Below, piece after piece: positions 8,616 through 63,924 of a stretch of 64,000 nt of DNA. The stretch spans positions 186,001 to 250,000 of IMG/VR virus record IMGVR_UViG_3300035665_000001; one strand, given 5' to 3'. Under the pieces are notes generated by a model. The model did not search any database. It was not told where the DNA came from and worked only from the letters and a program-made list of their open reading frames with translations. The position numbers and the translations under genes are program-made. Every line of letters starts with the position of its first letter. The first letter of the stretch is position 1.

Positions 8616-9944
8616 CTATATATTTATTTGGTAGGTGGTATTATTATCTAAATCAATTAACGCATTTCTAAGTGGTGGGGTTATTATCTCTTTTAATGCG
8701 TTTAATAGATAATCAACATCATCTTTTGTATGGGTATAATGAATGGAGATTCTCAACCAACCCATATCTGGTCTACTGTTTGGATCGTTTGGTAATCCAA
8801 GAAGTATATGTCCGTATGGACCAGCACAACTGCATCCTGCACGAGTTTCTAGTTGATATTGAGTTGATAGTTTTTCACATAGTTCTTCGGGAGTAAAACC
8901 TTTAACATTTAATGAACATATACCAATATTGGGAACATCCATATTTCCATAAACAGTAACATTAGGAAACGTACTCACTTCAGAAACGAAATACCGATGT
9001 AATTCTTTTTTGATATTCTTAATTTTATCTAATCCGAAATCATTTCGTAATTTATACGCTTTGGCAGTTTTTATAAATTGTAATATGCCCGGAGTTCCTG
9101 CATTTTCTCTAATATGTAAATCATCGTCATAATAGTGTTCTTCTGAATTAACATAACAAACTGTTCCACCACCTGCAAAAGTGGGTGGTAATGTAGTATC
9201 AACTAACGATTTTCTAATTACTAATAAACCTACACTACCTGGTCCACCAATACATTTATGTGGTGACATAAACATTACATCATAAAATGAGGAGGGTATA
9301 TTGATGTAAGGTGAACTTGTAGCAGCATCTAGACATAGCACAGCGTTATACTTCCTTGCTATGACACTTACCGCCTGTACATCGGTTATAATTCCAGTTA
9401 CGTTAGATGCTACGGATAAGCAAATATAAATTTCTCGATTTTTATTTTCTTGTAGTTTTTTTTCCAAATCTAATAAACATAATGTACCTGTATCATTTAA
9501 ATTTAATCGTATTATATCGGCAATGGATTCTCGATATGATACATCATTTGAGTGATGTTCATATGGACCGACTAATACTACAGGTTTATCAATTACTTTT
9601 ATTTCACATCGACGTTTTGTTCGTGGTGGTAAATAAATTCCAATCAATTCCTGAAATTTTTTTATTGCCGCTGTAGATCCATAACCTGCAGGTATTATTT
9701 CAAAATCGAAAGGATTTATTTCAAGTAATTTAAATAACGCATTTCTTGAAGTGGTCCAATGTTCGTTCATATAATTTGAAAGGGTTGCATCTTTAGAATG
9801 TGTATTTGCGTAATGTGCTGAAATTTGTTTCATTTCGGCTTCAATACTTTCAACACAAAGACCACTGGCAGTATAATCGAAATATTTATTTGCATTGGGA
9901 TTTATAAATTTGATTTTCACAGTTGCGATTTCCTTAGGTTGCAA
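8616..9944 (-). CDS. Aminotransferase class V / cysteine desulfurase-like PLP enzyme
   Basis: YFDYTASG, YANTHS, GSTAAI, EHHSN, DAA, SPHK (PLP Lys), GTPG, RAGCSCAGPYG (catalytic Cys loop). Confidence 0.9.
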   Translation of the reverse strand: MQPKEIATVKIKFINPNANKYFDYTASGLCVESIEAEMKQISAHYANTHSKDATLSNYMNEHWTTSRNALFKLLEINPFDFEIIPAGYGSTAAIKKFQELIGIYLPPRTKRRCEIKVIDKPVVLVGPYEHHSNDVSYRESIADIIRLNLNDTGTLCLLDLEKKLQENKNREIYICLSVASNVTGIITDVQAVSVIARKYNAVLCLDAATSSPYINIPSSFYDVMFMSPHKCIGGPGSVGLLVIRKSLVDTTLPPTFAGGGTVCYVNSEEHYYDDDLHIRENAGTPGILQFIKTAKAYKLRNDFGLDKIKNIKKELHRYFVSEVSTFPNVTVYGNMDVPNIGICSLNVKGFTPEELCEKLSTQYQLETRAGCSCAGPYGHILLGLPNDPNSRPDMGWLRISIHYTHTKDDVDYLLNALKEIITPPLRNALIDLDNNTTYQINI

Positions 9945-10035
9945 TGGTTTCGAGAATAAAATTATTTATAACATTTTTTTAAGAATTATTGTTAATCTTT
10001 AGTATAATAATTTTTTAATATAAAGAGAAAATAGA

Positions 10036-10820: not shown

Positions 10821-10828
10821 TATAAATA
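10821..10828 (+). promoter_or_regulatory. T4-like late promoter TATAAATA
   Basis: Exact TATAAATA about 35 nt upstream of ATG 10862; specificity is limited in AT-rich DNA. Confidence 0.4.
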
Positions 10829-43965: not shown

Positions 43966-43973
43966 TATAAATA
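43966..43973 (+). promoter_or_regulatory. T4-like late promoter upstream of the terminase middle fragment
   Basis: Exact TATAAATA 36 nt upstream of ATG 44010. Confidence 0.5.
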
Positions 43974-44009: not shown

Positions 44010-44333
44010 ATGAAAGATATTAATGAGTGGGAGATTTTAACTCCAGAGGGATGGCGTGATTTTTCGGGAATTATCCAATTAGATAAGAAAGTTATCACTA
44101 TTGAATTTGATAATGGTAAACAGTTAACAGGTAGTGAAACACATCGAATTTTTTCTAAAATTGGAATACAAGAATTTAACACTTTAATGGTTGGTGATGA
44201 AATCAAAACCAATGATGGTTGGACTGTGGTAACTAAAATTTCAGATGTAAAACAAACTCAGAAAGTATATGATTTGGTAGAAGTAAAATCAGCTAACCAT
44301 CAATATTATACCAATGGTTTTGTTTCAAAAAAT
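44010..44333 (+). other. Atypically split intein C-half (TerL intein 1); partner N-half not in window
   Basis: Blocks B (SETH), F and G ending SKN, with +1 Cys. Confidence 0.82.
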
Positions 44334-44798
44334 TGTGATGAGATTGCGTTTATTCCCAACAGAATTCAGGAAGAATTTATGTCTGGCACAACACCGGCTC
44401 TTTCTGCTACAAAAGGAAAAATGTTAATTACCTCAACGCCCAATGGTTCGAGAGATTTATTTGCGAAACTTTGGTTTGGATCCGGTATGACATGGGATAA
44501 AAAACAATATACATACGTCAGAAAAAATGAACCAAAAAACCTTTTTAGTCCATTATTTGTACCTTTTTGGATTGACCCAGAAAAAAACACTGATGAATGG
44601 ATTCACAGAGAAAAGATGACTCTCGATAGCCCAATAGCATGGAAAATAGAGTTTGAATGTATGTATCCAGATACGTTGATTGATGTATATGATGAAAAAA
44701 CTAAAAATTATCAAACAATAACTATAGAAGATATGTATCGAATGATACTTCGAGATGAAATTGAGAATAAAGTTATTATTGATGAATCTGATAATTAG
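44010..44798 (+). CDS. terL: Large terminase middle fragment: IntC(108 aa) - ATPase Walker B/motif C region - IntN(46 aa)
   Basis: ILTPEGWRDFSGI..SETH..YDL..YTNGFVSKN|CDEIAFIP..LITSTPNG..IEFE|CMYPDTLIDV..ITIEDMY. Confidence 0.9.
   Translation: MKDINEWEILTPEGWRDFSGIIQLDKKVITIEFDNGKQLTGSETHRIFSKIGIQEFNTLMVGDEIKTNDGWTVVTKISDVKQTQKVYDLVEVKSANHQYYTNGFVSKNCDEIAFIPNRIQEEFMSGTTPALSATKGKMLITSTPNGSRDLFAKLWFGSGMTWDKKQYTYVRKNEPKNLFSPLFVPFWIDPEKNTDEWIHREKMTLDSPIAWKIEFECMYPDTLIDVYDEKTKNYQTITIEDMYRMILRDEIENKVIIDESDN
44658..44798 (+). other. Atypically split intein N-half (TerL intein 2), 46 aa
   Basis: CMYPDTLIDV block A plus ITIEDMY helix, then stop. Confidence 0.85.
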
Positions 44799-44806
44799 AG
44801 AAATAT

Positions 44807-45970
44807 ATGTTGTTGAAAGAAAAAATGATATTGATAGAATTCATAATATTCGCAAAAAACAATATTAATAATATCGCTGAAAATCCAACAGATACGTTCA
44901 TCGATAAAGTGGTTGAAATTTACCATCGCAAGAAAAATGTTGAATTTAAAAACCCACTAGCAAATGAATTTCCTAGAGCACCTAATACACTTGAATATTG
45001 GTTACACCGTGGATGGAATGAAAAAGAAGCAGAGAAAAAAAGGTGTGAAAAAATTCTCGCTAGTAGTTGCTCATTACAAGCTTTAATTGCTAAACATGGT
45101 GAAGAAAAAGGGTATCATTTGTTCACCGAAATCAATACTAAAAAATCAAATACTTTGGATGGTTTCATTAGAAGACACGGTGATGAAATAGGAAAAAAAT
45201 TGTACGCTGCATATACCCTAAAAATGTCCACACAAAATACTTTAGTTGGGATGATTGAAACTTATGGTGAAATTGAGGGTAATGAAAGATATAACACTAT
45301 GATTTCTGGTAAGATACATAACTTAGAAAGTGTTATTAAGCGATATGGGGAAGAAGAAGGTAAAAAACGATACACTGCTAGTAATTTAAAAAGAAGTAAA
45401 TCACACAGTTATGTGGGGTTCGTTGAAAGGTTTGGTTCTTACGCTGACCAAAAATGGGAGGAATTATCAAAAAATCGATCATATAGAACAACAGTAGATT
45501 ATTATATTGAAAAATATGGGGATGATTTAGGGAGAAAAAAACATACCGATTGGTTTAAATCATCGATTGGTGGTGATTTTAGTCAAAGTTTTTCAAAAAC
45601 ATCTAAAATGTTATTTGAAAGTTTAAAAAATAATGAATTTGCTCAATTTGGTTGTAATGAAGCTTTAATTGAATTAACTACAGATGAACAATCAGTTTTA
45701 AATAGGAAATTTATTCGCCCCGATTTTTTACTTGATAACAAAATAATTGAATTTTACGGAACCTATTGGCATTGTCATGAATCCATGTTTGCTGCAGATC
45801 AGATACATCCACAGTTTAATAAGACAGCAACAGATATACGAAACTACGATTGTAAGAAAAATGAGGTGTTGAAATTGAAAGGGTTTGATGTTTTGGTTAT
45901 TTGGGAACATAATTATTATGCTAACAAAGAAGGTATTATTGCACAGTGTAATGACTTCTTAAATCAATAA
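44807..45970 (+). CDS. Free-standing homing endonuclease with C-terminal Vsr-like PD-(D/E)xK domain
   Basis: Repeated K(H/Y)GxExGxxxY units; RPDF..IIEFYGTYWH..GFDVLVIWE; paralog of 62689-63924. Confidence 0.75.
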   Translation: MLLKEKMILIEFIIFAKNNINNIAENPTDTFIDKVVEIYHRKKNVEFKNPLANEFPRAPNTLEYWLHRGWNEKEAEKKRCEKILASSCSLQALIAKHGEEKGYHLFTEINTKKSNTLDGFIRRHGDEIGKKLYAAYTLKMSTQNTLVGMIETYGEIEGNERYNTMISGKIHNLESVIKRYGEEEGKKRYTASNLKRSKSHSYVGFVERFGSYADQKWEELSKNRSYRTTVDYYIEKYGDDLGRKKHTDWFKSSIGGDFSQSFSKTSKMLFESLKNNEFAQFGCNEALIELTTDEQSVLNRKFIRPDFLLDNKIIEFYGTYWHCHESMFAADQIHPQFNKTATDIRNYDCKKNEVLKLKGFDVLVIWEHNYYANKEGIIAQCNDFLNQ

Positions 45971-45991
45971 TACCACTAAGTTACTTACAAA

Positions 45992-46501
45992 TCAAAAAAT
46001 ACTACTATTATTTAATTTATCGTGATTCTTTTTAAATTCGGTAATCAAGTCTGTAACTAACTGATGGTCTTTAATGTATTGTTTAATATCATCAACAGTA
46101 GCAGTTACCAATCGTTTATTTCTAAATTTAGGCCAGTTAGATGTAATATCTCGTTTGTTACCTAAACGACCGTTTGCATCGTAATAAAATTTTCTAACTT
46201 TTACAATTGTATGGAATGGATGTTCCATCGTGGGATCAAAATCCTCAGTTCCATCAAAATACCATTTAACTTGGGACTTTTTAAAATTGCCCACAAGAAA
46301 AATTATTTCTGATTTTTCACCAATCGATTCTAGATAAGTATGCAATGCTAATGCAAATTCATAGCATTTTCCCGATTCAAATGCAGATGGTCCTCTCATT
46401 CCACGCTCAATAAAAAACATACTATTCCGGTTTAAATCCGAAATAATTTGTTCAATATTATACTGTTTCATTGAGGCTTCTAAAAGTGTTGATAATCTCA
46501 T
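45992..46501 (-). CDS. Hypothetical protein with a possible papain/transglutaminase-like Cys-His-Asp triad
   Basis: GKCYEFALAL .. FHTIVKV .. YYDANG; N-terminus MRLSTLLEA. Confidence 0.45.
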   Translation of the reverse strand: MRLSTLLEASMKQYNIEQIISDLNRNSMFFIERGMRGPSAFESGKCYEFALALHTYLESIGEKSEIIFLVGNFKKSQVKWYFDGTEDFDPTMEHPFHTIVKVRKFYYDANGRLGNKRDITSNWPKFRNKRLVTATVDDIKQYIKDHQLVTDLITEFKKNHDKLNNSSIF

Positions 46502-46592
46502 AAGTGGTTTTCCTATTAATTAAAGTTTTAACTATTTATCAACCCGAAATGTAAAATTACAAAATTGATTACATTGAAAGGAGAGTTAGACT

Positions 46593-48056
46593 TTGAGAAC
46601 CATATTAAAATTTATATTGATTACACTACTTTTGTTATTACCCGTAGTATTGATAACAAATCTAGGTGTGATACAACCTTCATACTATCATATTATTATA
46701 AATCAAATTTACAATACGGTAATTATAGTTTTGTCTGTATGTTTTATTACTACTATTGTTGGTGTAACACTATCATGGGTATTTGCAATTTACGATTTCC
46801 CCTTTAAAAATAGTTTGGAAAAAATAATTATTTTAGGTATGGTTTTTCCAAGTTATGTATTGGCATTTTTTTATTCCGAAATGTTTAATATCTTTGGTTC
46901 AATTGCGTTAATTGGTACTTTAGTTGTTACCACATTACCTTATGTTTTTATGATGGTAACTACCAGTATCCGAATACAATCCCAACGTATGGTTGAATCG
47001 GCATTGATGTTTGGTAAAGATAAGAGATGGATAAAAGGTAAATTGATATTGCCATTAATTTTTCCAACAATCGTTTTATCAACATTATTGGTTATGGGAG
47101 ATACATTTTCTGAATTTGGTGCCACTTATTTTTATGGTGTTAATACTGTGATGACTGGAATTTACGAAATTTGGTTTGGTTTGAATGAATCTATACAAGG
47201 GATACGATTGTCAGCATGGTTGTTAACAGTTGTTATAATGGTATATTTGGTTATTAATGTTTTGAAAAAAGTATTTGTTGATAAATCCGATAATTTTATA
47301 AACAGTCGTGAATTTAAAGGTATAGTGGTCGAGAATATAGGTATTAAAGGTTGGTTTATAACTTTTTTAATATTCTTACTAACCATTATTACTTTTTTTA
47401 TACCTTGTTTCGTGTTATTAACATGGGTAATTGAAAGTTATAACAAAACCGATTGGTTTAAAGTTTTAGCAACCACAATTAATTCGGGAATCTTAGCATC
47501 AATAATATCTTTAAGTGTATTATGTGTTACCACTATAATTTTATATTTGTTTAAGCATCGGCTAGTGGCAATAATGACAATTTGTAATACGTTGTATTCA
47601 ATACCAGGTATTGTTTTGGCAATAACGACAATCTTTATATCTACACATCTTCCATTGAGTTTTACACCTGTTATATTTTTGTATGTTTTAATAGTCAAGT
47701 ATATTGCAATTGGTGTTGATAATATTAGTGCTCCAATTCAAAAAATTCATAAACAACATTATCACTCCTCAAAATTGTTAGGTCATAGTTCCTTATGGTA
47801 TATTAAAAATGTTCAGTTTCCATTAGGTTTTCAAATATATTTGGTTGCAGGATTATTAGTTTGGATCGATGTCATTCGGGAATTAGTAATAGGGTTGACT
47901 ATTAGACCACAGGGATTAAATTTATTAAGTATCGAAATTTTTAGATTTATGGATTTAGAACAATTATCTATGAGTGGTCCTTGGATTTTATCTATGGTTA
48001 TTTTAACAATGGTTCCAATTTATTTTATAAATATGGTTTTAAAGCAAAATAGGTAA
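46593..48056 (+). CDS. fbpB: Fe3+ ABC transporter permease (FbpB/FutB-like)
   Basis: Multi-TM with two duplicated halves; ESALMFG..LILPLIFP EAA-like motif, SEFGAT. Confidence 0.85.
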   Translation: MRTILKFILITLLLLLPVVLITNLGVIQPSYYHIIINQIYNTVIIVLSVCFITTIVGVTLSWVFAIYDFPFKNSLEKIIILGMVFPSYVLAFFYSEMFNIFGSIALIGTLVVTTLPYVFMMVTTSIRIQSQRMVESALMFGKDKRWIKGKLILPLIFPTIVLSTLLVMGDTFSEFGATYFYGVNTVMTGIYEIWFGLNESIQGIRLSAWLLTVVIMVYLVINVLKKVFVDKSDNFINSREFKGIVVENIGIKGWFITFLIFLLTIITFFIPCFVLLTWVIESYNKTDWFKVLATTINSGILASIISLSVLCVTTIILYLFKHRLVAIMTICNTLYSIPGIVLAITTIFISTHLPLSFTPVIFLYVLIVKYIAIGVDNISAPIQKIHKQHYHSSKLLGHSSLWYIKNVQFPLGFQIYLVAGLLVWIDVIRELVIGLTIRPQGLNLLSIEIFRFMDLEQLSMSGPWILSMVILTMVPIYFINMVLKQNR

Positions 48057-48062
48057 ATCTGT

Positions 48063-48968
48063 ATGTTTGATGTAAAAAATCTAAACCTAATAATAGATGA
48101 TGTTGATATTCTACACAATATAAACTTTGATATTCATAATGGTGAAATACTTTCTATTATTGGACCGAGTGGTTGTGGTAAATCATCTATTTTAAAATCT
48201 ATAGCTGGAATTTATAAACATACTACAGGGGCATTAATATTAGATGGTGAAAATATCGCGGACAAACCTATTAATCTCAGAAATGTCAACTTAGTTTTTC
48301 AAGATTTCCCTTTGTTTCCACATATGACTACTATACAAAATATGCTTGTTGCCTGTGATAATAACCGAGTTATTGATATAGTCCTCGATGAAATGGGTAT
48401 CAAACATTTAAAATTTAAATATCCTCATGAAATGAGTGGTGGTGAACAACAACGAGTTGCATTAGCTCGTGCGATAGTGTATAAACCCAAATTATTATTA
48501 TTGGACGAACCATTTTCAAATATTGATGTGCTAACCACAAAAGTATTGAGACATAAAGTATTTAATTTATTGAAGCAATTTAATATTACTACTCTAATGG
48601 TTACACATGATTTGGATGATGTTTTTGAAATGAGTGAAAGATGTATCGTTATGAAAAATTCGAGTATTGTACAGTTTGATACTTTTGATAATTTATACAA
48701 TTATCCAGTTGACGAATATGTTTCAACTTTATTCGGTAATGTTGTTTCTTATGCAGGTAAAAATTATAGACCAGAAAATATATTAATTATTGCAGATTAT
48801 TCACCTAATTCCGTTAAAACTGTAATTAAAAATGTAAAATTTAAATCACATTATAATGAAATAACTTTAGAATTGGATAATAAACAAGATATCATTGTTT
48901 TTGATTATTATCGTAAAAAGTATAAAATTAATGAGATTATGTATTTGAATTTTAATAACCCATTATAG
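48063..48968 (+). CDS. fbpC: Fe3+ ABC transporter ATPase (FbpC/FutC-like)
   Basis: GPSGCGKS Walker A, VFQDFPLFPH Q-loop, MSGGEQQR signature, LLLDEPF Walker B, VTHD. Confidence 0.9.
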   Translation: MFDVKNLNLIIDDVDILHNINFDIHNGEILSIIGPSGCGKSSILKSIAGIYKHTTGALILDGENIADKPINLRNVNLVFQDFPLFPHMTTIQNMLVACDNNRVIDIVLDEMGIKHLKFKYPHEMSGGEQQRVALARAIVYKPKLLLLDEPFSNIDVLTTKVLRHKVFNLLKQFNITTLMVTHDLDDVFEMSERCIVMKNSSIVQFDTFDNLYNYPVDEYVSTLFGNVVSYAGKNYRPENILIIADYSPNSVKTVIKNVKFKSHYNEITLELDNKQDIIVFDYYRKKYKINEIMYLNFNNPL

Positions 48969-48980
48969 GAAAAACATATT

Positions 48981-49976
48981 ATGAAGAAAAATTTATGGTT
49001 GCTACTTTTTTTGTTTGGTATTTATAATGCATCTGCTTCAGATAAAAAGAGTATTCATGTTATTACTGATAGAAGTGATGCACACTTATTAGATTTAACA
49101 TCAAAATTTGAAAAAGAAAGTGGTGTTGAAGTGAATTTAACATTCGTTAAAAATGGCATTATTGAAAAAGTAAAAAGTTATGATTATGATGCAATTATCA
49201 GTAAGGATAGTAGTGAATTAGTTGCGGCGAAAGATGAGGGGTTGTTACATACTATTGATGATAGTGTGCTAGACAACATTCCAACCAATTTTAAGGATAT
49301 TGATAAACAATGGTTTAATATGAGCTATAGAATTAGATCATTTCATATGAAGAAAGGTTTAACAGATGCACCAACATCGTATGAGGATTTAGCAAAACCC
49401 CAGTATAAAAATAGAATTTGTATTAGAAGTTTAACTCACAATTACAATTTAGAAATGTATGGAACTATGTTATCATATATGGGTGAGGAGAAATTTACTA
49501 ACTGGTTTAAAGGATTTAAATCGAATATAGTTAAAGATTCGGCAGCAGGAAATGATAGAACCCAGGTTAAAGGTGTGTATGATGGTGAATGTGACATAGC
49601 AGTTGCAAATTCATATTATCGTGGATTGATGTTACAAGATCCGGAGCAAAAAAAATGGGCAGAAGCAACATATTTATACATACCTAACCAAGAAAACGGT
49701 AGAGGAGCGATAGCATTGTATTCTGCAGTAGGTTCGTTATCGGATAATACCAATAATAAAACATTTTTGAATTATTTAATTTCAAAAGAAACGCAACAAC
49801 AGTTATCATATGATAATTATGAATATCCAATTAAAACTGAAAATACATCACCTACTGTTAAACAATATGGTGATGCACAGAAATTGGACTATAAATCAAT
49901 CAAATTATTTGATAATGTTCAAAACGATTTATTTGAATTGAGAAAAAAAGCTTATTTAATTATTAAAGCCAACTAA
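48981..49976 (+). CDS. fbpA: Fe3+ ABC transporter periplasmic binding protein (FbpA/FutA-like)
   Basis: Signal peptide; SYEDLAKPQYKNRICIRS..HNYN, GNDRTQ, CDIAVANSYY, YEYP. Confidence 0.85.
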   Translation: MKKNLWLLLFLFGIYNASASDKKSIHVITDRSDAHLLDLTSKFEKESGVEVNLTFVKNGIIEKVKSYDYDAIISKDSSELVAAKDEGLLHTIDDSVLDNIPTNFKDIDKQWFNMSYRIRSFHMKKGLTDAPTSYEDLAKPQYKNRICIRSLTHNYNLEMYGTMLSYMGEEKFTNWFKGFKSNIVKDSAAGNDRTQVKGVYDGECDIAVANSYYRGLMLQDPEQKKWAEATYLYIPNQENGRGAIALYSAVGSLSDNTNNKTFLNYLISKETQQQLSYDNYEYPIKTENTSPTVKQYGDAQKLDYKSIKLFDNVQNDLFELRKKAYLIIKAN

Positions 49977-50944
49977 AACAAAACCAATTTTGCAATTGGG
50001 GTGAGTTTAATAAATTCACCCCAATGTTTCCAATCTCTTTCAGCTGATATAGTTTTTACAAACACTTTTGATCTTGAATTGAGGTCGGCAATCAAATCCT
50101 CATCAAATAATATTTTATCATCTTTTAATAATGAAATAGCTAATTGTTTCCATTCATCGTCAGAAAATTTAAAAAAATCTAAATATTTTGGATTCTCAAC
50201 GTATAAATCTGACATATTTTTAATAACTACTTGACCAATAGCTGTTGATGATATTCTCACAAATGGCAATATCTTTTCTAATGATCTGGATGATAAATTT
50301 CGTAAAAATGGATAGGTATAAACTGATAGTCCTGTCAATACTTTACCATCTCTTATAATACCCATTTTTATATAAAAATCAATAGTTTCATCTTCTCTAT
50401 CAAGTGAACGACAATTCAATAATATTGATGCCACCCAATTATTGTCAATGATGGGATAGTTTTTAACACCGTAAGTTTTAACCAACCATTCCATTGCAGG
50501 TAAATTGTGAAATTTATAAAACAATTGAAAGTATTTTATATCACTGAAATTTGTTAATTTATTTTCCTTGTATAACTTATCAAGTATTGGTACAACATTG
50601 GGATCATCATACTTTATACTTGATAAATCGGCATCAAAGAAAAATTTACGCAATTCTGGTGTAAATTTATCAATGGTTAATTTTTTTAACATTGCCGCAG
50701 TTATTGAATATCTACCCTTTGGTGTTTTTTTGATTTCTATACCATTTGCTTTTAAGGCTGATACAATAATTTCGACTTTTTTATTGAATTCATCGATTTT
50801 TAGATTTGATGTGTAATTGTTTCCTCGTCCAAAATAATCCAATATTTCTTCACGCAATCCACATTGTGAATTTCTAAAGGTTTCTAACCATTCGATTATG
50901 TTTAATCTTCCAGAAAGGGGTAAACTTAATAATTTTGATGCCAT
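49973..50944 (-). CDS. Hypothetical helical protein with C-terminal tag
   Basis: 323-aa ORF ending KLTPIAKLVLF; GATAAATA upstream. Confidence 0.6.
   Translation of the reverse strand: MASKLLSLPLSGRLNIIEWLETFRNSQCGLREEILDYFGRGNNYTSNLKIDEFNKKVEIIVSALKANGIEIKKTPKGRYSITAAMLKKLTIDKFTPELRKFFFDADLSSIKYDDPNVVPILDKLYKENKLTNFSDIKYFQLFYKFHNLPAMEWLVKTYGVKNYPIIDNNWVASILLNCRSLDREDETIDFYIKMGIIRDGKVLTGLSVYTYPFLRNLSSRSLEKILPFVRISSTAIGQVVIKNMSDLYVENPKYLDFFKFSDDEWKQLAISLLKDDKILFDEDLIADLNSRSKVFVKTISAERDWKHWGEFIKLTPIAKLVLF
49995..50025. terminator. Hairpin at the convergence of the fbp operon and the 49973 gene
   Basis: ATTGGGGTGA / TCACCCCAAT stem; lies inside the 3' end of the minus-strand CDS; weak U tract. 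Confidence 0.35.
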
Positions 50945-52048: not shown

Positions 52049-53608
52049 ATGACTTATACTGAAAATGATCTAATTTATTATAAAAACCACCCAGAACATA
52101 TAACGTCGGAACTTGATCACGATTTATTATTAGCATTAATATCTTATAACGTTGAAAATATGTCGCGTATTAAGAAACAAACCACCGAATTTATAAGTGC
52201 AGCTTATGATATAAGTCATTCAGTTTTTAAATATATTGATTTCAGTGAAGTATCTATTCACTTTTTAGAAATTGCAATATCAAATAACCCTACATTTATT
52301 CAATACCTATATTCACCAAGCCCAGAAATAATTAAATTAGCATTATCGAAAGACATCAACGTGTTTATGTATGTTGAGAAATACTTGGATGCTAGTATGT
52401 TTGAATGGTTGTTATCACAAAATGGATTGATGTTAGAATATGTCCCGGCAGAAATACAAACTGAAAAAATGGTATTGATAGCATTAAAAGAAAATGTACA
52501 GTCGTATAAATTTGCACATATAAAAACAAAAGAAACAGATATTTGTTTAATTAATATCGACCAAACAAAAATAAGTTGGATAACTGGTTTTTGGACAGAA
52601 TTAGTTAAACCGATAATTGAATATAATCCTTTATACATCGCCAAATTTTTCGATACCCCTGAAATATTAACCAATGATATTGTAAAAATGGCATTAAGAA
52701 AAAACCCAAAAATTTATAAAATTCTACCAAATCCAAACCCAGAATTAAAATTGTATGCCGCTGAATTGGATATTTCTTTACTTGAACACATGAAATTTGA
52801 CAGAACACTGATTGAACATATTGTTTCTAAAAACGGGTTAGCTCTTAAATATGTAAAGAAAAAAGATTTGTATATAATAAAAATAGCAATTTTACAAAAT
52901 GTATTTTCACTCGATTATGTTGTAAATGTTGATAGACCTAGACAATTTCTTATTGATTATGCGTTTAAGCATGATGGTGCTGCATTAAAATATATGACGT
53001 CACCTACATACAAACAATGTTTAGACGCAGTTACTAGAAATCCATTGGCAATTCAATTTGTTCCAGCGTTACATAACACTGAAGAGATACAATTGGTGGC
53101 GTTGCATGGTGGGAAATATGAAGTGGTACAGTATATTTCTACACCTGCATCAAATGTGGTTATTTTGGCAATGATTGAATGTGATCCAAGTTATATATTT
53201 AAAATTCCAAATCCAACAAAAGAAATATATAAACTTGCGTTTAAACATGATGGTCGATTGATGATGCAATTTCCAAATTGGAATAATAAATTTGATCCTG
53301 ATGTTATTTCTGTTGCACTTAGTCAAGATGGTGAAATATTTGAATATGTTGAACGCAAAACTAAAACTTACGCGACTGTCGCAATTAGTCAATATCCACC
53401 AGCGATACAATGGGTTATATTCCAGGATTTAGAATTAGCTACTTTAGCGGTAAATTTAGATCCAAGAACGATATTTTTCGTCGATAAAAGTATATTAGAT
53501 AAAAAATTATTTGAAACTGCACTTACATTAGATCCAGACTTTTTTGAACATACAGCTGGTGAGATGACATGGGATGAATGGTTGAAAATAATTACACCAA
53601 TACAATAA
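52049..53608 (+). CDS. DUF4116-like tandem repeat protein
   Basis: Many roughly 24-aa units such as LSQNGLMLEYVP, VSKNGLALKYVK, FKHDGAALKYMT, VTRNPLAIQFVP. Confidence 0.75.
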   Translation: MTYTENDLIYYKNHPEHITSELDHDLLLALISYNVENMSRIKKQTTEFISAAYDISHSVFKYIDFSEVSIHFLEIAISNNPTFIQYLYSPSPEIIKLALSKDINVFMYVEKYLDASMFEWLLSQNGLMLEYVPAEIQTEKMVLIALKENVQSYKFAHIKTKETDICLINIDQTKISWITGFWTELVKPIIEYNPLYIAKFFDTPEILTNDIVKMALRKNPKIYKILPNPNPELKLYAAELDISLLEHMKFDRTLIEHIVSKNGLALKYVKKKDLYIIKIAILQNVFSLDYVVNVDRPRQFLIDYAFKHDGAALKYMTSPTYKQCLDAVTRNPLAIQFVPALHNTEEIQLVALHGGKYEVVQYISTPASNVVILAMIECDPSYIFKIPNPTKEIYKLAFKHDGRLMMQFPNWNNKFDPDVISVALSQDGEIFEYVERKTKTYATVAISQYPPAIQWVIFQDLELATLAVNLDPRTIFFVDKSILDKKLFETALTLDPDFFEHTAGEMTWDEWLKIITPIQ

Positions 53609-55470: not shown

Positions 55471-55533
55471 AATACTTGTTAAATTATTATAAAACTAACA
55501 ATCAAAAAATAAAAAACTTTATTGGAGAACAAA

Positions 55534-56856
55534 ATGATTGAAAACAATGTTAGAGAATTAACTGATAAAGAAAAATTACTGGAATTAAAAGAATGGTATT
55601 CCTCTGATGAATTATCAAAATCCCTTGATGTTACTGAAGAAATGCTTGGTAATTTTTTAAATGATAAAAGTTCTTTTACATTAACAAATTCTGAGAAATT
55701 GAACGATTTTTTTAATAACCATGTTCATGAAAATTCAAAATTTGAAATGATTAAAAATGTTTATGGTTTGTGGGAAACTGATGAAAAACAATTTATGGTT
55801 GATACTCCTGATGGGTTTCAATTTGTTAGTGAATTTATTCATAAAGATTCAAGAAGTTGCTTTGACTTAAGAACCGATAATTTTCATATTGAATGTTCGG
55901 GTGACCATTTGATTGAAACTGATAAAGGTTGGGTGAAAACTGAAGATATTGTAGTTGGTTCAAAAGTGTTAACCCGTGTTGGTTTTGAGGAAGTTAAATC
56001 AAATGCACAACTTAGTGATAGTGATGTTTACGATATGACTGTTGAACATGATAATCATCGATATTGGGGTGGTGCCGGTATTTCATCACATAATTCTGGT
56101 AAATCTTTTCTTATGGCTAAAGCGATTGTTGAGGCTCAAAAAGAAGGTTATATGGTGGCAGTATTAGATTCGGAACAAGCGGTTTCACAGGATTATTTGA
56201 AAAAAATTGGGGTTGATTTAGACCCATCAATGTTAATGACTGTGCAGGTACAAACAGTTGAACAAACTCAAGATATGCTTCTAGAAGTTTTGGAAGGTGT
56301 TAAGGAAGAACAAGAAGCTTTAGGAAATACCAAAGAACTAAAATTATTACTGATTGTTGATTCCATTGGTATGCTTTCATCTGGAAAAGCACTAGCAAAT
56401 GCTGAAGCTGGACATCACGCGGCTGATATGGGTACTAAAGCAAAAGCATTAACCAATATGTTCAACCAAATTGTACAAAAAGTTGGTATTACTGAAACTG
56501 TTTGTTTAGTAACTAATCATGGAGCATTAGAAGTTGGAGTTATGTTCCCACAACTCAAACCAAAAGGTGGACAATGTTTAGTAGCAGGTACAAAAGTACA
56601 AACTGATAAAGGTTATAAAAATATTGAAGAAATCCAAGTTGGTGATATGGTGAGAACACACTTGAACCAAATTAAACCTGTTGAAAAATTATTTAGTTTC
56701 GATAATCTTGATATTCTTAATTTTGAATTAGAAACAGGACAAAACATTAAAATGTCGAAGGATCATAAAATGTTAGTTTTGCGAAATGGTGAAAAATTGT
56801 GGTTGGAAGCTCAATTTATAACTACTTATGATTCATTGTTAGCACTTGATGTTTAA
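55534..56856 (+). CDS. recA: RecA/UvsX fragment 2: IntC(187 aa) - ATPase core - IntN(93 aa)
   Basis: GGAG RBS; ..CSGDHL..YDMTV..ISSHN|SGKS..LDSE..IVDSIG..VTNH..KGGQ|CLVAGTKV..SKDHK. Confidence 0.9.
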   Translation: MIENNVRELTDKEKLLELKEWYSSDELSKSLDVTEEMLGNFLNDKSSFTLTNSEKLNDFFNNHVHENSKFEMIKNVYGLWETDEKQFMVDTPDGFQFVSEFIHKDSRSCFDLRTDNFHIECSGDHLIETDKGWVKTEDIVVGSKVLTRVGFEEVKSNAQLSDSDVYDMTVEHDNHRYWGGAGISSHNSGKSFLMAKAIVEAQKEGYMVAVLDSEQAVSQDYLKKIGVDLDPSMLMTVQVQTVEQTQDMLLEVLEGVKEEQEALGNTKELKLLLIVDSIGMLSSGKALANAEAGHHAADMGTKAKALTNMFNQIVQKVGITETVCLVTNHGALEVGVMFPQLKPKGGQCLVAGTKVQTDKGYKNIEEIQVGDMVRTHLNQIKPVEKLFSFDNLDILNFELETGQNIKMSKDHKMLVLRNGEKLWLEAQFITTYDSLLALDV

Positions 56857-60952: not shown

Positions 60953-62692
60953 ATGGCTAACTATATTGATTTTGCTTATTTAGGTAAAACCGCAGACCCA
61001 ACAGGCATTAGAGTGTGGGAACAAAATTATGAAACAGGTAAAATTGATGAGAAAGATTATGACATAAAAGATTATTTGTATTTTTACATTGATGCTACTG
61101 ACGAGAACAAAATTGAAAAAAATTTAATTTCTCAAAGGGGAACAAAAGTTAAAAAAGTGGTTGCAGATAACTTTAAAGTTCTTAGAAATGGTGAATCTGC
61201 GAAAATGTTTCATAGTTTAAATCTTAATACTTATGAGTCTGATATTGAACCCTTACATAAGGTAATGTTGGATAATTATGGAAAAGATCATCAAAAAGCC
61301 ACTAATTGGAATTTAGCTTTATATGATATTGAAACGGATGTTCGTATGGAGGATTCTTTTATGGGTATGCGAGCAAATGCAGATCGAGAGATAAACGCTA
61401 TTTCTGTGTGGTATTCGAAACCAAATAAATTTTATAATTTTACCGTTGTACCACCTATGCTGCGAGATGAATGGGATTTTGATACTATTGAAACTCGTGG
61501 TAATTTTGAGATTATCTATTTTGATAATGAAGAAGAAATGCTGGAAACATTTTTCACAGTTACAAAAAAACATGAAACTATGGCATTAGGTGCGTGGAAT
61601 GGGGATTTTTTCGATACCAAGTATATTTTTGATAGATGCAAAAATATTTGGAAAGAAAAAGGTGCTGCAGAACGAATGGGGCGGTTTACAAAAGTTAAAA
61701 AAACTAAAATCATGTTGGGTGAAAAAGAAGAAATTTTGGTTAGACCAATTGGTATGATTTGGTACGATTGTATGGAGGCTTATAAGAAAAATGGTCCAGA
61801 ATTAGAATCGTTTGCTCTAAATGCTGTAGTTGAACATGAAAATTTGGGAAGTAAGTTAGATTTTGAAGGGTCGTTTGAAACTTTATATCACGGAAGTAGA
61901 AAAGATAGAGATAGATTTTTAGAATTAACACCAAAGAAAAAAAGAAAAAATTTGATTAAAAAATCTAATGAGATTGGAAACTCGGTTATTTCTGATTTGG
62001 GGTTATATAGCGAATGTAAAGATATGTTGAAGATGGATACAAGCATCGAAGAATATGAATTGGAAACTCGAATTCAAATAAGTATTACTGATAGATTGGA
62101 AGAGCTTCTCAAAATGAATGAAACCAAAGAAGATTTAGGTGATATGTTTGAGGATTTTGAACGATTTGTAGTGTATAAAAAGTTAACAGATACTTATAGA
62201 CTTTTTGTTGATTATTCTAATCAGGATAGTCAACTTTTACATGATTTAGAAATGAAGTTGGAAAAATTTAAAACTCTTATGATGTTGGCACAGTATAATG
62301 TATCATCGTTTTATGATGTATTTTCTACACTCAAACAGGTTGAACAGGGTATTACTAATTTTGCTCATTTATATAATAATAAAGTTGTTATTGATCGAGA
62401 GTATGATAAGAAAAAACAGATTTATAATAAATTTGTTGATAAAGATTTGTTACAAATCAGAATCGACAATGATACTCGTATACAACCAAATGATAATCGG
62501 AAGATAAGAGAAATAAAAACTCTTTTGGAGCAAAAAAAAATACCTGGAGCCAACGTGCTTCAACCATACGTAGGATTGATTTCTTACAATGAGGCGGAAA
62601 CACCACAGTTAGCAAGAGAATTCAAATCATTAAAAAATGAATTGCGAGAAATAGATGAACAGTTAAAACAATTTGAAATGGATGAAAATTAG
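60953..62692 (+). CDS. polB: Family B DNA polymerase N-terminal (3'-5' exonuclease) subunit of a split gene
   Basis: ExoI YDIET, ExoII WNGDFFD, ExoIII YSNQD; ends PGANVLQPYVG plus a coiled coil, before polymerase motif A. Confidence 0.85.
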   Translation: MANYIDFAYLGKTADPTGIRVWEQNYETGKIDEKDYDIKDYLYFYIDATDENKIEKNLISQRGTKVKKVVADNFKVLRNGESAKMFHSLNLNTYESDIEPLHKVMLDNYGKDHQKATNWNLALYDIETDVRMEDSFMGMRANADREINAISVWYSKPNKFYNFTVVPPMLRDEWDFDTIETRGNFEIIYFDNEEEMLETFFTVTKKHETMALGAWNGDFFDTKYIFDRCKNIWKEKGAAERMGRFTKVKKTKIMLGEKEEILVRPIGMIWYDCMEAYKKNGPELESFALNAVVEHENLGSKLDFEGSFETLYHGSRKDRDRFLELTPKKKRKNLIKKSNEIGNSVISDLGLYSECKDMLKMDTSIEEYELETRIQISITDRLEELLKMNETKEDLGDMFEDFERFVVYKKLTDTYRLFVDYSNQDSQLLHDLEMKLEKFKTLMMLAQYNVSSFYDVFSTLKQVEQGITNFAHLYNNKVVIDREYDKKKQIYNKFVDKDLLQIRIDNDTRIQPNDNRKIREIKTLLEQKKIPGANVLQPYVGLISYNEAETPQLAREFKSLKNELREIDEQLKQFEMDEN

Positions 62693-63924
62693 ATTCTCTC
62701 TTTAATTAGATTCACACATTTTTCTACCATCTGTTCTATATTTTCTTTTGTTTCATAATCCCAAATTTCGATTACAGTGAACCCTTTTTTTTCAGCAGAT
62801 GCTAATTTTAATCTGTCCAATTCAAATTTTTCATCTGCTGATTTTCCTGTCCAAGGACATCTCCATCGTTCCCATTGCTCAGTTGTTAATTTTTCTTTTG
62901 ATGGGTGTACATGACTTCCATTATATTCAAAAATTAATTTTAGTGGTAAAATAGTATAATCGAATGAATGCAGTTTTGTACCTTCTTCAATTTTGTATTC
63001 ACAAGAGTTTTCAACGCCGTAAAAAATATCAGAAAAATCAATACCGTGTGCAAGTGAAAAATCAGTTAAATGTTTAAAAAATGCCAATGATTCTTTGGAA
63101 GCAATATAACCTGCATTGCTGTTTTTGTATTTTTTCCATCTGGTCAACCCTTCTTCATATCCATGAACTCTGATGAAATTCTCTTTAGTATTTGCAGATC
63201 GTTTACAAAATAGGTTGTATTTCTTTTCACCTAATTCTGTACCATACCGGGAAATGAAATTCTCCTTACTTAATTTAGATTTTTCTTTAAATTCTACCCA
63301 TTTTTGTTTTCCCAATTCTTCTCCATGCCGAAGTTTAAAATTTTCTTCGGATAGCATGCACTTTTTTTTCCATGATTTGTATTTCTTTTCACCCAATTCA
63401 ACACCATGACGTTTTTGCATTTTTTCTAAAGTTTGTCCACCTCTTGTAGAAATTGCCTTGGTAAACAATTTCAACCCTTCATCATTTCCATATTTCTTAG
63501 TGAATTTTTCTAAGGTAAGCACTTTTTTTGAATTCATTTCAGTGTATCTTCTAGATCCTTCTTCCAATCCATATTTTTCTACTTGTCCCTCTAACGTGTT
63601 ACCAATACCTTTTTTTCTGTTATTATCAAGATATTTTTTTAAACCTATCTCGTCACCATACTTTAACCTAAAATAATGTTCAGTGTTAGATTTAGTCTTT
63701 AGAAATTTTTTAAATCGGACTACTAAATTTTCTTCTAGGGTAGTGGTAGATATTAGCATACAATGAAACGAATATCTTTGTTCTTGTGTTAAATTTCCTC
63801 CCAATACTAAGTTGACGTCTTTTAATCTTTCAATCCCAATGTTTTCAAAAGTAATCCCATTCTCCTTAAAAAACTTATTGGTGAACGCTCTTTTCGTTTT
63901 TAAATTTAATTCTGAATATTTCAT
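62689..63924 (-). CDS. Free-standing homing endonuclease with Vsr-like C-terminal domain
   Basis: Many (K/R)YGxExGxxxY repeats; SFDY..IFEYNGSHVHP..GFTVIEIWD; paralog of 44807-45970. Confidence 0.75.
   Translation of the reverse strand: MKYSELNLKTKRAFTNKFFKENGITFENIGIERLKDVNLVLGGNLTQEQRYSFHCMLISTTTLEENLVVRFKKFLKTKSNTEHYFRLKYGDEIGLKKYLDNNRKKGIGNTLEGQVEKYGLEEGSRRYTEMNSKKVLTLEKFTKKYGNDEGLKLFTKAISTRGGQTLEKMQKRHGVELGEKKYKSWKKKCMLSEENFKLRHGEELGKQKWVEFKEKSKLSKENFISRYGTELGEKKYNLFCKRSANTKENFIRVHGYEEGLTRWKKYKNSNAGYIASKESLAFFKHLTDFSLAHGIDFSDIFYGVENSCEYKIEEGTKLHSFDYTILPLKLIFEYNGSHVHPSKEKLTTEQWERWRCPWTGKSADEKFELDRLKLASAEKKGFTVIEIWDYETKENIEQMVEKCVNLIKERI

What the first reader, a model, noticed from the sequence alone, without database searches (positions are those of the whole stretch)
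46593..49976. Complete three-gene Fe3+ ABC uptake system in a phage context
Seen: permease, ATPase and binding protein are intact and co-directional, flanked by phage genes, with the same AT-rich composition. The binding protein keeps YN and YY tyrosines and DR/RxR arginines and lacks the N-terminal His-Tyr, like Tyr/carbonate-type FbpA as I recall it. The ATPase is short (301 aa). Inference: a long-resident auxiliary module for iron acquisition during infection; whole transporters are much less common in phages than single binding proteins.
Basis: partly seen in the sequence, partly recalled or inferred. Interest (0 to 1): 0.65.

Follow-up and report, generated by a model that had tools for sequence, protein, structure and literature searches.

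The report
Phage-borne ferric iron ABC importer
A 306-kb T4-like jumbo phage from lake water carries an intact three-gene ferric-iron ABC importer that it has kept, together with its relatives, for a long time; this is an uncommon case of a phage carrying a whole nutrient transporter rather than a single binding protein.

Summary
Window 46593-49976 has three intact, co-directional genes: a fused two-domain permease (487 aa), an ABC ATPase (301 aa) and a periplasmic binding protein (331 aa, with a signal peptide).

- **Phage context.** The contig is an IMG/VR virus record of 306,333 bp with a T4-type capsid, portal and sheath. The module's GC (28%) matches the genome's (30%).
- **Iron specificity.** The binding protein's best solved relatives, by sequence and by predicted fold, are all ferric-binding proteins (M. 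haemolytica, B. pertussis, M. catarrhalis FbpA). It keeps the three iron-binding tyrosines and the aligned arginines. It lacks the His-Tyr of FutA-type proteins. That makes it class III (Tyr3 plus carbonate).
- **Not a chimera.** Seven distinct relatives on large phage-like contigs carry the same permease-ATPase-binding protein module at the same syntenic place. The module has diverged about as much as the flanking phage genes. Independent lake metagenomes tile the region at 99% identity or more.
- **Wider distribution.** A second, unrelated phage lineage carries a distant version.

Not shown: iron binding, expression, timing and host. The mechanism is ordinary FbpABC; the carrier is what is unusual. 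Complete ABC transporters in huge phages were recently noted in a preprint, without an iron assignment.

The parts
46577..46585 (+). Shine-Dalgarno-like AAAGGAGAG box, 7-8 nt before the TTG start of the permease
   Evidence: Read directly from the sequence.
46593..48056 (+). FbpB-like fused permease, 487 aa. It has two BPD_transp_1 halves, about 12 hydrophobic segments, and EAA-type coupling loops near aa 135 and aa 392.
   Evidence: Pfam PF00528, two stretches. Hydropathy and motif positions. 55%, 54% and 41% identical to the permeases of L001, L093 and L004.
48026..48033 (+). T4 late-promoter-like TATAAATA, 30 nt before the ATPase start. Its function is uncertain.
   Evidence: 9 sites in 64 kb against 19 expected, and 4 of the 9 lie 16-37 nt before start codons. 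Only partly conserved in L001 and absent in L093 and L004.
48063..48968 (+). FbpC-like ABC ATPase, 301 aa. Motifs: Walker A at aa 34, Q-loop at aa 79, signature MSGGE at aa 124, Walker B at aa 144, H-loop at aa 180, and a shortened TOBE-like C-terminal domain from about aa 235.
   Evidence: PF00005, E 2e-35. Motif positions. Alignment with bacterial FbpC proteins of 337-363 aa. NCBIfam best hits are PhnT2, PotA and ferric ATPases, all far below their cut-offs.
48981..49976 (+). Class III FbpA-like periplasmic ferric-binding protein, 331 aa. Signal peptide is about aa 1-20 (48981-49040). Ligand candidates are Y155, Y212 and Y213. Anion-site arginines are R31, R117 and R119.
   Evidence: PDB sequence search: 1Q35, E 2e-47. 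Profile search: E 3e-65. AlphaFold model pLDDT 94. Foldseek: 2OWT and 1SI0, TM 0.83-0.88. Invariant columns.
44010..44798 (+). Terminase-large-subunit fragment beginning with an intein C-end. This phage core gene lies directly before the permease in the relatives and anchors the module in the phage backbone.
   Evidence: phrog_36964 terminase large subunit. 64% identical to L001:5550-6374, which abuts the L001 permease. TATAAATA lies 37 nt upstream.
44807..46501 (.). Insertion specific to this genome, between the terminase fragment and the permease. It holds a 387-aa endonuclease-like ORF (+) and a 169-aa ORF (-).
   Evidence: phrog_22677 and an endonuclease family. No counterpart in L001, L004 or L093.
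49973..50944 (-). Convergent 323-aa phage ORF of unknown function, overlapping the binding-protein stop by 4 nt. It marks the downstream border of the module.
   Evidence: 38% identical to the ORF at the same place in L001. No Pfam or PHROG hit. Independent contigs bridge this junction.

Best explanation
The three genes encode a type I ABC importer of the FbpABC kind, specific for ferric iron and carried by a lytic-type T4-like jumbo phage of lake bacteria.

Inferred mechanism. After infection of a diderm host, the binding protein is exported by the host Sec system and its signal peptide is cut. In the periplasm it clamps Fe3+ between three tyrosines (Y155, Y212, Y213) and a synergistic carbonate held by N-lobe arginines (R31, R117, R119). 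It docks on the phage's own 12-helix permease, and a dimer of the phage ATPase drives the iron into the cytoplasm. The outer-membrane step is left to the host. The pay-off would be to keep or raise iron supply while host gene expression is taken over, in iron-poor water and during a long jumbo-phage infection.

Shown here: intact genes with catalytic and ligand motifs; class III FbpA sequence and fold; phage carrier; vertical inheritance in a phage lineage.

Inferred only: iron binding, transport, expression during infection, and benefit to the phage.
For: - **Genes and domains:**
- **ATPase and permease motifs:**
- **Sequence matches of the binding protein:** the top eight PDB sequence matches are all iron-binding proteins (1Q35 E 2e-47; profile E 3e-65). 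The first non-iron protein appears at E 2e-4.
- **Fold:** model pLDDT 94.1. Foldseek gives TM 0.84/0.88 to carbonate-bound B. pertussis FbpA (2OWT) and 0.83/0.87 to closed M. haemolytica FbpA (1SI0). AfuA, the 2-AEP binder and PotD reach only TM 0.61-0.74 at 14-19% identity.
- **Ligand residues:** the ligand tyrosines and arginines are invariant in 21 close and 60 wider homologues. Class III is defined in PMC10182148 as three Tyr plus carbonate bound by N-lobe arginines. The class IV His-Tyr motif is described in PMC6254336.
- **Phage carrier:**
- **Same module and synteny:** seen in seven distinct clusters on contigs of 30-261 kb.
- **Divergence:** module identity of 41-62% parallels that of flanking phage genes at 45-75%.
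- **Tree:** the clade is one branch (100/99) with a long stem; the best bacterial identity is 37%.
- **Independent assemblies:** lake metagenome contigs at 99% or more cover the stretch and bridge both borders.
- **Docking model (weak support):** permease with binding protein scored 0.43 against a best control of 0.00. The mark was reached by 51 of 78 solved complexes and 2 of 108 mismatched pairs. At 0.60 or under it was reached by only 5 of the 78 solved ones and by all 4 mismatches that passed. Runs agree in at least 79% of contacts, and partner pLDDT is at least 83.
Against: - No expression data: none of the listed runs that hold the region is RNA.
- No curated NCBIfam model reaches its cut-off for any of the three proteins. 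The binding protein's only NCBIfam hits are 2-AEP and thiamine models at 36-50 bits against cut-offs of 93-395.
- No outer-membrane receptor, NrdB, radical SAM or NifU gene was found in the phage, so no obvious phage-encoded iron sink. The exceptions are a distant SufS-like desulfurase and a sub-threshold 2OG-Fe(II) oxygenase hit.
- No Fur box.
- In the relatives the permease follows a terminase fragment that carries a late-type promoter motif. That would mean late expression, which fits a nutrient-uptake role less well.
- Host unknown.
Confidence: 0.7

Rival explanations
1. It is a real phage ABC importer, but the substrate is not free ferric iron. Candidates are another metal or oxyanion, an iron chelate, a sugar phosphate, thiamine or 2-aminoethylphosphonate.
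For: NCBIfam hits of the binding protein are to 2-AEP (PhnS) and thiamine/SfuA-type models, and of the ATPase to PhnT2 and PotA. Cluster D binding proteins have switched substrate before: AfuA binds sugar phosphates, and it appears in the fold list. FutA-type proteins can hold organic ligands beside iron (PMC6254336).
Against: Those NCBIfam scores lie 5-10 times below the cut-offs. All strong sequence and fold matches are ferric-binding proteins. The three iron tyrosines and the aligned arginines are invariant over 60 homologues.
Confidence: 0.1
2. The importer works, but its role is not nutrition of the infected cell. It might strip periplasmic iron to alter receptor expression or exclude competing phages. 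It might instead load iron into progeny virions ('Ferrojan horse').
For: There is possible late-type promoter context. No clear phage-encoded iron-dependent enzyme set was found. The Ferrojan horse idea is discussed for pelagiphage infections, where host afuABC is up- or down-regulated depending on the phage (PMC12753301).
Against: A full importer with ATPase moves iron into the cytoplasm, which is what a nutritional role needs. Nothing in the sequence links it to virion proteins. Both ideas are speculative.
Confidence: 0.12
3. The module is bacterial DNA joined to phage DNA by mis-assembly, or a recent passenger without function.
For: The record is a metagenome assembly, linear, with completeness estimated at 85%. 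An endonuclease-like insertion sits next to the module in this genome only.
Against: The same module lies between the same phage genes in seven distinct relatives from different samples and data sources. Its GC equals the phage's. Independent contigs at 99% or more identity bridge 46593 (run X3) and 49976 (runs X3 and X6). No bacterial genome of 185,579 species has a binding protein more than 37% identical. All functional motifs are conserved across 41-62% divergence.
Confidence: 0.02

Closest known systems
Class III ferric-binding protein transporters FbpABC of Mannheimia haemolytica, Bordetella pertussis and Moraxella catarrhalis (PDB 1Q35/1SI0, 1Y9U/2OWT, 7LI0/7LI1)
   Same: Same fold (TM 0.82-0.89). 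Same three tyrosine ligands and aligned N-lobe arginines, and no His or Glu ligand. Same three-component type I ABC importer, with a fused two-domain permease and a single ATPase gene.
   Different: - Only 26-31% identical.
- Gene order is permease-ATPase-binding protein instead of binding protein-permease-ATPase.
- The ATPase is 301 aa with a shortened C-terminal domain; some phage relatives have 236-242 aa with no such domain.
- Encoded by a phage.
- No link to transferrin or lactoferrin receptors.
FutA/IdiA (class IV) iron-binding proteins of cyanobacteria (Synechocystis FutA1/FutA2, Trichodesmium Tery_3377, Prochlorococcus FutA) and C. jejuni FbpA
   Same: Same fold and the same three C-lobe tyrosines. 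They are aquatic, iron-stress proteins. Sequence E-values are 1e-25 to 1e-41.
   Different: The N-lobe His-Tyr pair that completes iron coordination in class IV is Ser32-Asp33 here, invariant in the clade.
Phage nutrient-uptake auxiliary genes (for example cyanophage pstS), and the complete ABC transporters reported beside pspA in 15 huge phages (preprint 10.64898/2026.10.24.761521)
   Same: A phage carries host-type uptake genes. The preprint describes sets of binding protein, ATPase and permease in phages over 200 kb.
   Different: pstS is a single binding protein that relies on the host permease (my own knowledge). The preprint assigns no substrate and ties its transporters to membrane-stress genes. 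Here the substrate class is defined by ligand residues, and the module sits next to a terminase fragment, not pspA.
Second phage lineage with a distant module (IMG/VR contigs L011 and L012)
   Same: Permease-ATPase-binding protein order. The binding protein is 34% identical, and the module lies beside tail sheath, adaptor and virion genes.
   Different: It is an unrelated phage backbone: only a weak sheath match to this genome, GC 38-41%. Its permease is shorter (434-436 aa) and misses the Pfam threshold. In the tree it is a separate branch.

Membership tests
Class III ferric-binding protein (FbpA, Tyr3 + carbonate) | Three tyrosine iron ligands from the C-lobe (Y142, Y198, Y199 in M. haemolytica FbpA) | tested here: met
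   Y155, Y212 and Y213 align to them. They are invariant in 21 and in 60 homologues.
Class III ferric-binding protein (FbpA, Tyr3 + carbonate) | N-lobe arginines that hold the synergistic carbonate | tested here: met
   R31, R117 and R119 align with R10, R101 and R103 of 1Q35 and are invariant. PMC10182148 states the role of N-lobe arginines. Which of the aligned arginines touch carbonate was not checked on coordinates.
Class III ferric-binding protein (FbpA, Tyr3 + carbonate) | No protein ligand from the N-terminal loop (no His-Tyr as in class IV, no His/Glu as in class I) | tested here: met
   S32-D33 stand opposite the H-Y of FutA1 (2PT1) and C. jejuni FbpA (1Y4T). This is invariant in the clade.
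Class III ferric-binding protein (FbpA, Tyr3 + carbonate) | Two-lobe cluster D binding-protein fold closest to solved ferric-binding proteins | tested here: met
   Model pLDDT 94.1. Ranks 1-38 in the PDB fold search are ferric-binding proteins except one (rank 28, 4R6Y). The top hits 2OWT and 1SI0 have TM 0.83-0.88.
Class III ferric-binding protein (FbpA, Tyr3 + carbonate) | Binds Fe3+ with a synergistic anion | not testable with these tools
   Needs purified protein (spectroscopy, ICP-MS, ITC).
Class III ferric-binding protein (FbpA, Tyr3 + carbonate) | Reaches a curated family threshold (NCBIfam equivalog) | tested here: not met
   No ferric binding-protein model was hit. The 2-AEP and thiamine models score 36-50 bits against cut-offs of 93-395. 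The ferric ATPase model NF008513 scores 195 bits against 496. So this is a divergent member, not an equivalog of a curated protein.
Type I ABC importer | Permease with BPD_transp_1 domains and EAA coupling loops; ATPase with Walker A/B, Q-loop, signature and H-loop; secreted binding protein | tested here: met
   The signal peptide was read from the sequence (n-region KK, hydrophobic core, ASA|S site, no lipobox Cys); no predictor was run.
Phage auxiliary metabolic gene | Encoded inside a bona fide phage genome, with phage genes on both sides | tested here: met
   Capsid, portal and sheath. Terminase fragment upstream and conserved phage ORFs downstream. Synteny in seven relatives.
Phage auxiliary metabolic gene | Expressed during infection and beneficial to the phage | not testable with these tools
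   No RNA run holds the stretch. The host is unknown.
FutA/IdiA class IV | N-lobe His-Tyr pair coordinating iron | tested here: not met
   Replaced by Ser-Asp. The motif is described in PMC6254336.
AfuA-type sugar-phosphate binding protein | Closest sequence and fold relatives are AfuA/VcA0625 | tested here: not met
   AfuA does not appear in the sequence search at E 0.01 or better. In the fold search it ranks 41 or lower, with TM 0.67-0.72 and 18-21% identity.

The most novel reading that the evidence does not exclude
A cosmopolitan lineage of freshwater jumbo phages has kept a private high-affinity Fe3+ importer as part of its core genome, and a second phage lineage acquired one independently. 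On this reading, iron supply is a general bottleneck for large-phage replication in lakes. The importer would then work together with phage sulfur-mobilising or Fe-S functions. The hints for that link are the SufS-like gene in this window, an Aminotran_5 gene beside the module in one relative, and four radical-SAM genes beside the module in L094. If so, phages would directly alter iron fluxes of infected cells.
Probability: 0.3. Interest if true: 0.75.

Novelty: new variant of a known kind. Interest (0 to 1): 0.55.

Why it matters
Phages are known to carry single uptake components such as phosphate-binding proteins. Whole transporters are rare, and I found no paper in the searchable library that describes a ferric-iron importer in a phage.

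Here the module is conserved across a lineage that turns up in lake metagenomes of more than twenty studies. That suggests infected cells ('virocells') may take up iron with viral machinery, which bears on iron cycling and on what limits large-phage replication in oligotrophic water.

It is also directly testable. Three small genes can be expressed in a laboratory strain, and the binding protein has a predicted, mutable metal site.

Tried and rejected
- **Deposited phage genomes.** The DNA (near mode) and the binding protein (protein mode) gave no match. The permease found one 23%-identical hit in an 11-kb fecal phage contig.
- **IMG/VR.** The single protein found nothing. The profile found only the distant L011 and L012.
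- **Promoter and terminator scan.** Uninformative in 29% GC DNA: 60 sites against 45 expected.
- **Fur box.** No match with up to 3 mismatches.
- **Other genes in the phage genome.** No NrdB, radical SAM, NifU or TonB-dependent receptor. There is one sub-threshold 2OG-Fe(II) oxygenase hit outside the window, and no second ABC system. No tRNA genes.
- **Host.** Not resolved. The capsid is about 33% identical to jumbo myophages of Pseudomonadota (PA5oct, RaK2, SCTP-2), which is too distant to name a host.
- **Gene order as a phage signature.** Rejected, because a bacterial MAG contig (L025, beside a D-Ala-D-Ala ligase gene) has the same order.
- **All 21 close homologues as phage-borne.** Rejected. 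The deepest member lies on a TGA-recoded 223-kb contig of undecided nature, and its record could not be searched.
- **Not run.** The large representative-protein search, because the word search and the genome scan already bound the nearest bacterial relatives.
Full report
**What is there**

Window 46593-49976 holds three tightly spaced + strand ORFs.

- **Permease.** The first ORF (487 aa) starts at a TTG preceded by AAAGGAGAG. It has two BPD_transp_1 halves, about twelve hydrophobic segments, and two EAA-type loops. This is the fused permease typical of ferric-iron ABC importers.
- **ATPase.** The second ORF (301 aa) is an ABC ATPase with intact Walker A, Q-loop, signature, Walker B and H-loop.
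- **Binding protein.** The third ORF (331 aa) is a periplasmic binding protein (SBP_bac_6/11). Its N-terminus reads as a classical Sec signal peptide: two lysines, a hydrophobic core, an Ala-Ser-Ala cleavage site, and no lipobox cysteine. That points to a diderm host.

No curated NCBIfam model reaches its cut-off for any of the three. Family scans alone therefore leave the substrate open.

**The carrier is a phage**

The window is bases 186001-250000 of a single 306,333-bp contig. This contig is an IMG/VR virus record, linear, with estimated completeness of 85%.

- It encodes a T4 Gp23-type capsid protein (E 3e-81), a T4-type portal and a sheath-like protein.
- The capsid is about 33% identical to those of jumbo myophages such as PA5oct, RaK2 and SCTP-2. 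The polymerase is distantly gp43-like.
- The window itself holds terminase fragments, a RecA/UvsX piece and a polymerase.
- GC is 30.1% for the genome and 28.1% for the module.
- The DNA occurs in lake and freshwater metagenomes of 23 studies.

**Substrate**

By sequence, the top eight PDB matches are all iron-binding proteins:

- M. haemolytica FbpA 1Q35, E 2e-47
- Synechocystis FutA1
- B. pertussis FbpA
- Trichodesmium FutA
- C. jejuni FbpA
- M. catarrhalis FbpA
- Prochlorococcus FutA
- Synechocystis FutA2

The first non-iron protein appears at E 2e-4. A profile of the clade raises 1Q35 to E 3e-65.

An AlphaFold model (pLDDT 94.1) superposes best on carbonate-bound B. pertussis FbpA (2OWT, TM 0.84/0.88) and closed M. 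haemolytica FbpA (1SI0). AfuA (sugar phosphate), a 2-AEP binder, P5PA and PotD score far lower.

In the alignments:

- Y155, Y212 and Y213 match the three iron tyrosines of M. haemolytica FbpA (Y142, Y198, Y199).
- R31, R117 and R119 match its R10, R101 and R103.
- S32-D33 stand opposite the His-Tyr of FutA1 and C. jejuni FbpA.
- These residues are invariant in 21 close homologues, and the Tyr and Arg positions in 60 wider ones.

Published work defines class III as three tyrosines plus a carbonate held by N-lobe arginines (PMC10182148). Class IV is defined by the extra His-Tyr (PMC6254336).

**The short ATPase**

Bacterial partners are 337-363 aa. The window protein aligns with them throughout, but lacks about 25-40 residues of the linker before a recognisable, shortened C-terminal TOBE-like domain. 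Relatives have either this form (303-307 aa) or no C-terminal domain at all (236-242 aa). This reading rests on alignment only; no Pfam TOBE hit was obtained.

**Residence in the phage lineage**

The word search found 20 clusters at 41-64% identity (local alignments). Identity then drops to 38% or less (37% or less for full-length hits) in bacterial Fe(3+) binding proteins. A scan of one genome for each of 185,579 species found nothing above 37%.

Seven distinct clusters could be placed on contigs of 30-261 kb: the window, P0005, P0014, P0017, P0008, P0003 and P0007. All show permease, then ATPase, then binding protein. Between the permease and the ATPase lie zero to three lineage-specific small ORFs of unknown function. 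Most of these contigs share the same downstream neighbours: a DEDDh exonuclease, a 224-aa ORF, a DUF4116 protein and a 176-aa ORF.

In L001 and L093 the permease directly follows the orthologue of window 44010-44798, a terminase fragment. In the window an endonuclease-like ORF and a reverse ORF have been inserted between them.

Identities of the window's proteins to those of three relatives' loci:

| Protein | L001 / L093 / L004 |
|---|---|
| Permease | 55 / 54 / 41% |
| ATPase | 55 / 57 / 45% |
| Binding protein | 58 / 62 / 51% |
| Flanking phage genes | 45-75% |

So the module has diverged together with the backbone.

In a maximum-likelihood tree of 67 sequences, the 21 close homologues form one branch (100/99) on a long stem. 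Only the inner 19 (97/97) include members shown to be phage-borne.

**Assembly check**

Logan contigs of independent lake runs (X3, X4, X6) tile 45.5-51 kb at 99% identity or more, without differences. One contig bridges the permease start (X3, 46531-46735). Two bridge the binding-protein end (X3 49683-50054; X6 49205-50057). Together with the conserved synteny, this excludes a chimera.

**Gene order and origin**

Bacterial loci have binding protein, then permease, then ATPase. The phage order is permease, then ATPase, then binding protein. That order is not unique to phages. It also occurs in three other places:

- **L025:** a bacterial MAG contig, beside a D-Ala-D-Ala ligase gene.
- **L011 and L012:** a second phage lineage whose module sits beside sheath, adaptor and virion genes. 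Its backbone is unrelated and its GC is 38-41%.
- **L094:** see 'An unexplained relative' below.

In the unrooted tree the phage clade, L011/L012 and all other bacterial sequences meet at one node. A common origin of the two phage branches is neither shown nor excluded.

**How it probably works, and what is missing**

The parts suffice for periplasm-to-cytoplasm transport of Fe3+. The phage genome has no TonB-dependent receptor, so the host must bring iron across the outer membrane.

A structure-prediction test of the permease with the binding protein gave weak support. The score was 0.43, with a best control of 0.00. The mark was reached by 51 of 78 solved complexes and 2 of 108 mismatched pairs. 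At 0.60 or under it was reached by only 5 of the 78 solved ones and by all 4 mismatches that passed. Runs agree in at least 79% of contacts, and partner pLDDT is at least 83.

Timing is open. A sigma-70-like site lies in the 91-nt gap before the permease. A T4 late-type TATAAATA lies 30 nt before the ATPase and 37 nt before the terminase fragment. Neither is conserved in all relatives. No Fur box was found.

Possible iron sinks in the phage are thin. There is a distant SufS-like desulfurase in the window (8616-9944) and a sub-threshold 2OG-Fe(II) oxygenase hit at contig position 253.7 kb. No NrdB, radical SAM or NifU was found.

Infection-driven changes of host afuABC expression in SAR11 show that iron uptake matters to some phages (PMC12753301).

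**An unexplained relative**

P0135 belongs to the deepest cluster of the clade and lies on a 222,882-bp contig (L094).

- Its neighbours are open only if TGA is read as sense. ORF coverage is 33% under code 11 and 98.5% with TGA as sense. In-frame TGA makes up about 2-8% of codons in the neighbours counted, and GGN codons are few, which looks like TGA=Gly.
- The three transporter genes there have no in-frame TGA and use GGN normally. Their GC is 42-51% against 29-37% for the neighbours. Two of them end in TGA.
- The neighbours include four radical-SAM proteins, a U32 peptidase and TauE.
- The record could not be searched, so phage or bacterium is undecided.

Another genetic code was named for this locus only, because the locus itself shows it.

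**Comparison and novelty**

In mechanism this is an ordinary class III FbpABC importer. Four things are unusual:

- the carrier is a phage;
- the clade is deep and private, with no bacterial relative above 37% identity;
- the gene order is rearranged;
- the ATPase regulatory domain is reduced.

Complete ABC transporters in huge phages were noted in a 2026 preprint, beside pspA and without a substrate. I found no report of a ferric-iron importer in a phage in the searchable library; that library does not cover subscription journals.

I rate it a new variant of a known kind, of moderate interest.

Noticed in passing
window 44010-44798, 55522-56856, 60953-62692; contig C1:63601-66579: Core phage genes are fractured or interrupted.
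- The terminase piece begins with an intein C-end.
- The RecA/UvsX piece is flanked by Hint domains on both sides (PT-HINT aa 127-184, Hint_2/Intein_splicing aa 352-432).
- The polymerase ORF covers only the N-half of gp43.
- The portal is one 1066-aa ORF with an insert of about 560 aa.
This looks like the 'fractured genes with split inteins plus homing endonuclease' arrangement.
   Followed up: partly
window 44807-45970 (+) and 62689-63924 (-): Two paralogous endonuclease-like ORFs (phrog_22677). The first is an insertion, absent from the relatives, between the terminase fragment and the permease. Relatives carry DUF7487 proteins nearby.
   Followed up: partly
window 8616-9944 (-): A distant SufS-like class V aminotransferase / cysteine desulfurase (Pfam E 4e-44; NCBIfam SufS 139 bits against a cut-off of 475), with a TATAAATA 19 nt upstream. 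One relative (the contig carrying P0007) has an Aminotran_5 gene 1.3 kb after its binding protein.
   Followed up: partly
L094:1-21014 (JGI contig of 222,882 bp): A TGA-recoded genome (Gly-like usage) in which the three transporter genes form a standard-code island of higher GC. The island sits next to four radical-SAM genes, a U32 peptidase and TauE. Phage or bacterium is undecided.
   Followed up: partly
L011:3454-7487 and L012:7749-10957: A second, unrelated phage lineage carries a distant permease-ATPase-binding protein module beside tail sheath and head-tail adaptor genes. In L011 a 228-aa ORF with a weak outer-membrane beta-barrel hit follows the binding protein.
   Followed up: partly
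L001:5084-5422 (-): The 261-kb relative carries a P-II (GlnB-like) nitrogen-regulator gene just before the terminase fragment and the transporter module.
   Followed up: no
whole contig (306,333 bp): No tRNA or tmRNA gene was found in a phage of over 300 kb, which is unusual for jumbo myophages.
   Followed up: no
window, 9 sites (for example 9963-9970 -, 10821-10828 +, 43966-43973 +, 48026-48033 +): TATAAATA is depleted overall (9 sites against 19 expected), yet four of the nine sites lie 16-37 nt before start codons in the right orientation. This suggests T4-type late promoters are in use.
   Followed up: partly
window 52049-53608 (+): A 519-aa protein with repeated DUF4116 units, conserved at 47-51% identity in the relatives, just downstream of the module.
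   Followed up: no
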